Source: Ostrea edulis
Lineage: Eukaryota
Direction: 5' to 3'
Assembly: GCF_947568905.1 (NCBI RefSeq)
Contig: NC_079165.1
Coordinates: forward strand, 83,700,001-83,764,000
DNA length: 64,000 nt
Shown: positions 1 through 64 of the stretch, piece after piece
How positions within the stretch are numbered: position 1 is the first letter of the stretch
How the letters are laid out: each line of letters opens with the position of its first letter
The notes under the pieces: generated by a model
Database searches by the model: none
Told to the model about the DNA's origin: nothing
The model's input: the letters and a program-made list of their open reading frames with translations, nothing else
Program-made: the position numbers and the translations under genes

Positions 1-64
1 TTTAACAGACTTACCCCCCTTTTATTTCCTGTAATAGCTACACCTCTCACCAGATTAATCACTT
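1..64. other. Empty (uninserted) TTAA target site of the 9.3-kb element
   Basis: 1-54 matches the left flank of the element (about 12565-12625: CCCCCTTTTATTTCCTGTAATAGCTACA.CTCTCA..CAGA). It is followed by a single TTAA (55-58) and then directly by the right-flank sequence TCACTTGTATT seen at 21884. Confidence 0.85.

What the first reader, a model, noticed from the sequence alone, without database searches (positions are those of the whole stretch)
1..64. Empty TTAA site at the window start shows the 9.3-kb block is a true insertion
Seen: bases 1-54 resemble the flank preceding the element (about 12565-12625, with a few substitutions and a 7-bp gap). After one TTAA they run straight into the sequence that follows the element at 21884. 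Inference: an upstream, more diverged paralogous unit lacks the insertion (never inserted or precisely excised), so filled and empty alleles sit side by side in one array.
Basis: partly seen in the sequence, partly recalled or inferred. Interest (0 to 1): 0.75.

Follow-up and report, generated by a model that had tools for sequence, protein, structure and literature searches.

The report
Empty TTAA site beside filled copies
In an oyster genome, a 12-kb segment is repeated four times in a row; three copies carry the same 9.3-kb nest of jumping genes at one TTAA and the oldest copy shows that TTAA intact, which proves a real but ordinary transposon insertion.

Summary
Window 1-54 plus a single TTAA (55-58) plus 59 onward is collinear with the two flanks of the 9.25-kb block (12630-21879) at about 94% identity, with six substitutions and one 7-bp indel in the first 58 bases.

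The window lies in a tandem array of four units, running from about 1.9 kb upstream of the window to about 14 kb beyond its end. The first unit is empty. The next three carry the same block between TTAA duplications.

The block is a nest. Its host is a transposase-less TIR element of a roughly 640-copy family, with a TTAA duplication and AG...CT ends. That is the Kolobok signature, not the piggyBac one. Inside it sit an Ngaro-like tyrosine-recombinase retrotransposon, a 1-kb palindromic repeat and a SINE-like insert.

The empty unit is the outgroup: K2P about 0.04 to the filled units, against 0.013-0.029 among the filled units and 0.006-0.008 among the block copies. The most likely order is duplication, insertion and nesting, then two further duplications.

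Exact excision is not excluded. No full unit lies upstream. Short-read contigs did not bridge the junction. This is an ordinary filled-site/empty-site case. The scan had already noted the block and its Ngaro-like insert on this window.

The parts
1..54 (+). Last 54 bases of the left flank of the empty target site. The homology continues upstream of the window to about -1921.
   Evidence: matches 12565-12625 with 6 substitutions and a 7-bp indel. The upstream 1.2 kb is 94.3% identical to 11391-12613.
55..58 (.). Single, unduplicated TTAA: the empty target site
59..10442 (+). Rest of the empty (first) array unit. It is homologous to the sequence that follows each filled block (21884-32322, 43946-54553, and 67225 onward beyond the window).
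   Evidence: K2P 0.038-0.041 to the three filled units; 6-8% mismatch in the first 2 kb after the site
12626..12629 (.). Left TTAA target-site duplication of filled copy A
12630..21879 (+). 9,250-bp composite insertion (filled copy A)
12630..12651 (+). Left 22-nt perfect TIR AGCTGACATGAATTAATAAATA (5'-AG end). Imperfect inverted similarity extends to about 60 bp.
21858..21879 (-). Right 22-nt perfect TIR (ends ...CT-3')
21880..21883 (.). Right TTAA target-site duplication of filled copy A
12630..14099 (+). Left arm of the host non-autonomous TTAA/TIR element
   Evidence: 86-97% identity to other family copies (L012-L023); 4.8% from a small-sample family consensus.
14100..20043 (+). Nested Ngaro-like tyrosine-recombinase retrotransposon (gag-like ORF, RT, RNase H-like, YR, GDSL/SGNH hydrolase), interrupted at 14688-15704
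   Evidence: RVT_1 2e-15, Phage_integrase 3e-13, Phage_int_SAM_1 6e-5, Lipase_GDSL_2 1e-7; other genomic copies at 92-98% identity join query 361-948 directly to 1965-6304.
14690..15704 (.). About 1,015-bp palindromic repeat with TIRs of at least 50 bp and a 6-bp TGTTAT duplication, nested inside the retrotransposon
   Evidence: about 20 listed separate genomic copies at 95-98%, each matching itself in reverse at about 70%
20044..21879 (+). Right arm of the host element
   Evidence: 20160-20815 and 21137-21883 match the family copies
20816..21136 (+). SINE-like dispersed repeat inserted in the right arm, flanked by a CTAAGTG duplication
34565..43945 (+). Filled copy B with both TTAA duplications (element 34569-43941)
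   Evidence: 99.4% identical to copy A
56827..64000 (+). Filled copy C with its left TTAA. It runs off the window; the element ends at window coordinate 67220, followed by TTAA at 67221-67224.
   Evidence: 99.2-99.3% identical to A and B, with one extra insertion of about 1.1 kb at about 64061-65187
10636..10945 (.). Unit boundary zone of the array. Homology at the left edge starts here and homology at the right edge ends here. It overlaps a SINE-like repeat (10742-10945).

Best explanation
A segment of about 12.3 kb with no recognisable gene, in an oyster chromosome, was first duplicated in tandem. The unit boundaries overlap a SINE-like repeat, so unequal recombination between two such repeats may have caused the duplication. 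A non-autonomous cut-and-paste transposon with a TTAA target and AG...CT ends then inserted into one of the two copies at the TTAA about 2 kb from the unit start, duplicating that TTAA. These ends and target match the Kolobok signature. The element also carries a SINE-like repeat, an Ngaro-like tyrosine-recombinase retrotransposon and, inside that, a 1-kb palindromic repeat. The filled 22-kb unit was then duplicated twice more. The result is one empty unit followed by three filled units. Window 1-58 is the never-occupied target site of the oldest unit. Shown here: the collinearity, the single versus duplicated TTAA, the family's mobility, the nesting, and the greater divergence of the empty unit. 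Inferred: the order of events and the recombination mechanism.
For: Empty site exact and collinear at about 94% identity. TTAA plus 22-nt TIR present at all three filled copies. Four other copies have TTAA on both sides and unrelated flanks. The TTAA+TIR pattern occurs 645 times forward and 641 reverse in the genome, against 0 for the control pattern. Array structure. K2P between empty and filled units is 0.038-0.041 over 10 kb and about 0.08 over the 1.9 kb before the site; filled units differ by 0.013-0.029 and element copies by 0.006-0.008. The empty unit is 4-10% diverged right up to both sides of the site, so it is an old lineage and not a recent derivative of a filled unit. All nested elements are shared by the three filled copies. 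The sequence from the empty unit through two filled units has no N gap. For KolobokP elements, reported excisions also remove 1-5 flanking bp on one side (PMC9587614), which makes a seamless empty site less likely to be an excision product.
Against: The host copy lies about 4.8% from a small-sample family consensus. That is no younger than the per-lineage divergence since the first duplication (2-4%), so insertion before the first duplication followed by exact loss cannot be ruled out by dating. Divergence among the units is mosaic, which points to gene conversion or haplotype mixing and weakens any molecular-clock ordering. Short-read contigs of four runs do not bridge the junction, so the junction rests on the assembly alone. 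A 150-N gap sits at the boundary between filled units 2 and 3 (54691-54840).
Confidence: 0.72

Rival explanations
1. The element inserted before the first duplication, so all units were once filled. The first unit later lost it exactly, either by transposase-mediated excision or by deletion between the two TTAA duplications, restoring a single TTAA.
For: The site is exact, as expected of a seamless excision. The host copy's distance from the family consensus (4.8%) is not smaller than the per-lineage divergence of the units (2-4%). The family is abundant, and some members are only 0.4-2% from the consensus, so it was active recently.
Against: The termini are of Kolobok type, not piggyBac type. 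The only excision data found for Kolobok relatives show loss of 1-5 flanking bases (PMC9587614), and no such loss is seen here. It needs one extra event. The element is 9.3 kb with a heavily nested interior, which makes it a poor excision substrate (inference). The subfamily structure of the family makes 4.8% an upper bound on the copy's age.
Confidence: 0.18
2. Assembly artefact. The empty junction, or part of the array, comes from collapsed or falsely duplicated haplotypes, so 'empty' and 'filled' are alleles or a mis-join rather than neighbouring paralogues.
For: Oyster genomes are highly heterozygous (own knowledge). Divergence among the filled units is mosaic. A 150-N gap lies exactly at a unit boundary. 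Short-read contigs did not bridge the junction.
Against: The empty unit and two filled units are contiguous without any N. Both flanks of the empty site are 4-10% different from every filled unit, so it cannot be a collapse of a filled unit. A mis-join landing exactly on one TTAA with intact neighbouring bases is very unlikely. Even if the units were allelic, the conclusion 'true insertion' would stand.
Confidence: 0.06
3. The three filled units acquired the block by gene conversion from one filled unit, not by duplication of an already filled unit.
For: The element copies are more alike (0.6-0.8%) than parts of their flanks (up to 4.6% in 1-kb bins), and which pair is closest changes along the unit.
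Against: Converting a 9.3-kb heterology is uncommon (own knowledge). The flank immediately left of the site (11699-12696) is as similar as the element itself (0.7-0.8%). This rival changes only the route to three filled copies, not the status of the empty site.
Confidence: 0.04

Closest known systems
Kolobok superfamily DNA transposons (non-autonomous derivatives), described from oysters and other bivalves (PMC9587614)
   Same: [quoted passage not shown] Termini 5'-RR...YY-3' (here AG...CT). Short perfect TIR. Abundant transposase-less copies. The host lineage (oysters) is rich in Kolobok elements.
   Different: No transposase is present in any of the 17 copies inspected, so the defining protein could not be tested. 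The arms are weakly similar in inverted orientation, not the long terminal direct repeats of the KolobokP lineage. No autonomous partner with these TIRs was found.
piggyBac superfamily elements
   Same: TTAA target duplicated on insertion. An exact empty site is what piggyBac excision would leave. The genome holds 119 PF13843 matches, several with intact ORFs.
   Different: Three intact piggyBac families of this genome end TTAA|CCCTT... or TTAA|CTCAT... (YY...RR), whereas this family ends AG...CT. None of the 12 best piggyBac loci carries this TIR within 1.5 kb. No DDE_Tnp_1_7 is present in the element.
Ngaro-like tyrosine-recombinase retrotransposons with an SGNH hydrolase ORF (Goodwin and Poulter 2004, as described in PMC9210276)
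   Same: The nested element encodes a gag-like ORF, RT, an RNase H-like region, a tyrosine recombinase and a GDSL/SGNH hydrolase in that order. Other genomic copies show an A...B-A-B arrangement of terminal repeats.
   Different: The copy in this block stops after the first B repeat, with no A2-B2. It is split by a 1-kb palindromic repeat, and its ORFs are fragmented into several frames.
Filled-site/empty-site comparison between segmental-duplication paralogues, the standard test for a transposon insertion
   Same: The logic and outcome are the same: a paralogous site carries one copy of the target that is duplicated at the filled site.
   Different: Here the filled unit was itself amplified to three tandem copies, so the insertion travelled with a 22-kb segmental duplication.

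Membership tests
Kolobok superfamily (DNA transposon) | [quoted passage not shown] | tested here: met
   TTAA lies on both sides of 3 array copies and 4 unrelated copies. The empty site has a single TTAA. The TTAA+TIR pattern occurs 1,286 times in the genome and the control pattern 0 times.
Kolobok superfamily (DNA transposon) | Termini 5'-RR ... YY-3' (PMC9587614) | tested here: met
   Element begins AG and ends CT in all copies read
Kolobok superfamily (DNA transposon) | Kolobok-clade DDD/E transposase encoded by the element or by an autonomous partner with the same TIRs | tested here: inconclusive
   No long ORF in 16 other copies of 1.4-7.3 kb. Pfam finds nothing belonging to the family itself; the one hit is a nested Tc1-type HTH. 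No autonomous partner was identified, and no Kolobok protein query was available.
KolobokP lineage | Long terminal direct repeats, each with its own short TIRs | tested here: not met
   Self-comparison of 5 copies shows only inverted, weakly similar arms (67-75% in patches) and a terminal inverted repeat of about 60 bp. No direct terminal repeats were found.
piggyBac superfamily | TTAA target-site duplication | tested here: met
piggyBac superfamily | piggyBac-type termini (CC.../...GG after the TTAA), as in this genome's own intact piggyBac families | tested here: not met
   This family has AG...CT. Three intact resident piggyBac families have CCCTT.../CTCAT.... PMC9587614 states that the termini distinguish Kolobok from piggyBac.
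piggyBac superfamily | DDE_Tnp_1_7 transposase in the element or in a partner with the same TIRs | tested here: not met
   No such domain in the element. The 12 best PF13843 loci lack the TIR.
Ngaro-like YR retrotransposon (nested element) | RT/RNase H plus tyrosine recombinase, without a methyltransferase domain | tested here: met
   RVT_1, weak RVT_3, Phage_int_SAM_1 and Phage_integrase hits. No methyltransferase hit among the 7 ORFs scanned.
Ngaro-like YR retrotransposon (nested element) | Split direct repeats A1 ... B1-A2-B2 | tested here: inconclusive
   Absent from this copy, which ends after B1. At three other genomic loci (C3:86.99 Mb, C1:64.41 Mb, C1:65.10 Mb) query 367-608 recurs after 5897-6304 and is followed by a second 5897-6304.

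The most novel reading that the evidence does not exclude
The empty site might be the product of a seamless excision of a 9.3-kb, heavily nested Kolobok-type element. That would be evidence that a Kolobok transposase can excise exactly as piggyBac does. Separately, the divergence peak next to the site (6-10% within 2 kb, falling to 1-2% at 9-10 kb) may show that the large heterology locally blocks gene conversion between array units.
Probability: 0.15. Interest if true: 0.4.

Novelty: new member of a known kind. Interest (0 to 1): 0.2.

Why it matters
The result gives a clean, internally controlled proof that the 9.3-kb block is an insertion. It fixes the exact ends and the 4-bp target of an abundant oyster transposon family, and it orders the local events: duplication, insertion and nesting, then amplification. 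It also corrects the likely superfamily from piggyBac-like to Kolobok-like. Beyond annotation and dating of this array, it opens no new question. Filled-site/empty-site pairs between paralogues are a routine finding in repeat-rich genomes.

Tried and rejected
1. Read support. One run search and one lay of Logan contigs from four studies were made. The contigs are short unitigs that stop before the junction (the nearest end 13 bp upstream) or are swamped by a high-copy repeat from about 85 bp downstream.

2. Autonomous partner. I inspected 16 family copies of 1.4-7.3 kb for ORFs and scanned six ORFs from them (plus one of the window copy's left arm) against Pfam. The only hit was a nested Tc1-type HTH. 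I also searched PF13843 across the genome and looked for the TIR near the 12 best loci, and found none.

3. Dating insertion against duplication through distance to a family consensus. This was inconclusive because of subfamily structure and mosaic unit divergence.

4. Gene or RNA content of the base unit. There is no ORF of 90 aa or more outside repeats, no Rfam family, and only a 21-bp minisatellite at 6739-7500.

5. Idea rejected: three independent insertions at the same TTAA. The three copies share every nested element and are 99.2-99.4% identical.

6. Idea rejected: a TA (Tc1/mariner-type) duplication with one more base in the element. The T before and the A after the TA are conserved in all five independent sites read, so TTAA is the target.

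Full report
**Observation.** Window 1-58 reads ...CACCTCTCACCAGA-TTAA and continues as TCACTTGTATTCG.... The left flank of the block ends ...CATCTCTCATAATTCACAAGA-TTAA at 12629. The right flank begins with TTAA at 21880-21883 and continues TCACTTGTATTTG.... A MAFFT alignment of window -95..208 against the joined flanks of the three filled copies has 304 columns. Identities are 93.5-94.9%, there is one 7-bp indel ending 11 bp before the TTAA, and the bases next to the TTAA are intact.

**Where the window sits.** The window is G000:C2:83,700,001-83,764,000 of an 895-Mb, 52-contig genome.

**Array structure.**
- Self-comparison of the window with 30 kb fetched on either side shows a tandem array with a period of about 22 kb.
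- TTAA plus the left TIR occurs at 12626, 34565 and 56827. The right TIR plus TTAA occurs at 21880, 43942 and 67221.
- Upstream of the window, only -1172..49 matches the unit (11391-12613, 94.3%). A weaker collinear match reaches about -1921, which corresponds to unit coordinate 10636.
- Downstream, the last unit continues to about 78405 (unit coordinate about 10849), after a private SINE-like insertion at 77757-78063.
- Phased at about 10.6-10.85 kb, the array therefore has four units: one empty (-1921..10442) and three filled.
The empty unit straddles the window start.
- The boundary zone overlaps a SINE-like repeat (10742-10945). This fits unequal recombination between two such repeats as the origin of the first duplication, which is an inference.

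**Is the block mobile DNA?**
- Its ends are a perfect 22-nt inverted repeat, AGCTGACATGAATTAATAAATA. Imperfect inverted similarity extends to about 60 bp.
- Each terminal 470-480 bp has more than 1,000 first-look candidates in the genome.
- The pattern TTAA+TIR, with at most one mismatch, occurs 645 times forward and 641 times reverse, against 0 for the reversed control.
- Four other copies fetched with flanks all show TTAA on both sides and unrelated flanks.
- Sizes in the sample range from 1.4 to 7.3 kb, most often 4.1-4.4 kb.
- None of the 16 other copies examined has a long ORF. The Pfam scans found only a Tc1-type HTH in one 5.6-kb copy, evidently another nested element. The family is non-autonomous.

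**Superfamily.**
- PMC9587614 states that Kolobok makes TTAA duplications and, unlike piggyBac, has termini 5'-RR...YY-3'. This family has AG...CT.
- The genome has 119 matches to the piggyBac transposase family PF13843.
- Three intact resident piggyBac families end TTAA|CCCTT... or TTAA|CTCAT....
- None of the 12 best loci carries the present TIR.
- The family therefore meets the two DNA-level Kolobok criteria and fails the piggyBac terminus criterion. The protein criterion cannot be tested.
- It lacks the long terminal direct repeats of KolobokP.

**Composition of the 9.25-kb block.**
- Family copies match only 12626-14099, 20160-20815 and 21137-21883.
- The interior encodes RT (RVT_1, 2e-15), a weak RNase H-like hit, a tyrosine recombinase (Phage_int_SAM_1 6e-5; Phage_integrase 3e-13) and a GDSL/SGNH hydrolase (1e-7).
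- That gene set is the one described for Ngaro-like elements with an SGNH ORF (PMC9210276).
- Other genomic copies are 92-98% identical. They join query 361-948 directly to 1965-6304, so the retrotransposon is 14100-14687 plus 15705-20043.
- The piece in between (14690-15704) is a separate palindromic repeat. It has about 20 listed separate genomic copies at 95-98%, TIRs of at least 50 bp and a TGTTAT duplication.
- Three other loci show the Ngaro split-repeat order B-A-B at the 3' end. The copy here stops after the first B.
- A SINE-like repeat with a CTAAGTG duplication sits at 20816-21136.
- All of these are shared by the three filled copies, which are 99.2-99.4% identical. Copy C has one further private insertion of about 1.1 kb beyond the window.

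**Order of events.**
- After the site (10 kb), the empty unit differs from the filled units by K2P 0.038-0.041, and the filled units differ from one another by 0.013-0.019.
- Before the site (1.9 kb), the values are 0.081-0.088 and 0.013-0.029.
- The element copies differ by 0.006-0.008.
- In 500-bp bins, the empty unit is 4-10% different from every filled unit right up to both sides of the site, falling to 1-2% at 9-10 kb. The empty unit is thus an old lineage and cannot be a collapsed or recently converted filled unit.
- The simplest history is duplication, insertion with nesting, then two more duplications of the filled unit.

**Limits.**
- Divergence among the filled units is mosaic. One-kilobase bins range from 0.1% to 4.6%, and the closest pair changes along the unit. 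This suggests gene conversion or haplotype mixing, so clock arguments are weak.
- The host copy is 4.8% from a small-sample consensus on both arms. The family has young (0.4-2%) and older (4-8%) members. This cannot exclude insertion before the first duplication followed by exact loss.
- Against that rival, reported KolobokP excisions also remove 1-5 flanking bp, and no such loss is seen here.
- Short-read contigs of four runs from four studies did not bridge the junction.
- A 150-N gap lies at the boundary between the second and third filled units. The empty unit and two filled units are contiguous without N.

**Verdict.** The finding is correct and well reasoned, but it describes an ordinary situation: a filled-site/empty-site pair between tandem paralogues. 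What this follow-up adds:
- the true array phase;
- the composite nature of the block;
- the Kolobok-type rather than piggyBac-type signature;
- the lean towards 'never inserted'.

The base unit shows no gene, Rfam family or other feature of note.

Noticed in passing
window 14100-20043; other copies at G000:C3:86994670-87002327, C1:64413620-64418609, C1:65103846-65105715: The Ngaro-like retrotransposon family is young (copies 97-98% alike). Some genomic copies carry the full split direct repeats (A...B-A-B), while the window's copy and several others end after the first B. This pattern would be expected from B1/B2 recombination.
   Followed up: partly
window 14690-15704 (also 36714-37770 and 58964-59936): A roughly 1,015-bp palindromic repeat with TIRs of at least 50 bp, internal 21/42/84-bp tandem repeats and a 6-bp TGTTAT duplication. 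About 20 separate genomic copies at 95-98% identity are listed. Its superfamily was not determined.
   Followed up: partly
window -1921..10442 compared with the filled units: Divergence between the empty and filled units peaks next to the insertion site (6-10% within about 2 kb) and falls to 1-2% about 9-10 kb away. The three filled units show a mosaic of near-identical and 2-4.6% diverged 1-kb blocks. Both patterns suggest gene conversion that is blocked near the 9.3-kb heterology, or haplotype mixing in the assembly.
   Followed up: partly
window 54691-54840: A run of 150 N lies exactly at the boundary between the second and third filled units, so the copy number of the array beyond this point rests on scaffolding.
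   Followed up: no
beyond the window, window coordinates about 64061-65187 (locus L004): Filled copy C alone has a further insertion of about 1.1 kb inside the block, so it is younger than the last unit duplication.
   Followed up: no
window 6739-7500 (and 28485-29390, 50555-51588): A 21-bp minisatellite of about 37 copies in each unit. Its length varies between units.
   Followed up: no
G000:C6:73543183-73547283, C9:58223988-58228088, C5:62058825-62062925, C1:55168608-55172645, C10:8573279-8577358 (L025-L032): Several piggyBac families with uninterrupted 567-624-aa transposase frames, copies 98-99.8% alike and TTAA|CCCTT or TTAA|CTCAT ends. These look like recently active elements in this oyster.
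   Followed up: partly
window 140-297, 2136-2290, 8453-8629, 10742-10945, 20814-21138 and many genomic sites: A SINE-like dispersed repeat with thousands of first-look candidates genome-wide. Copies lie at both edges of the array.
   Followed up: partly
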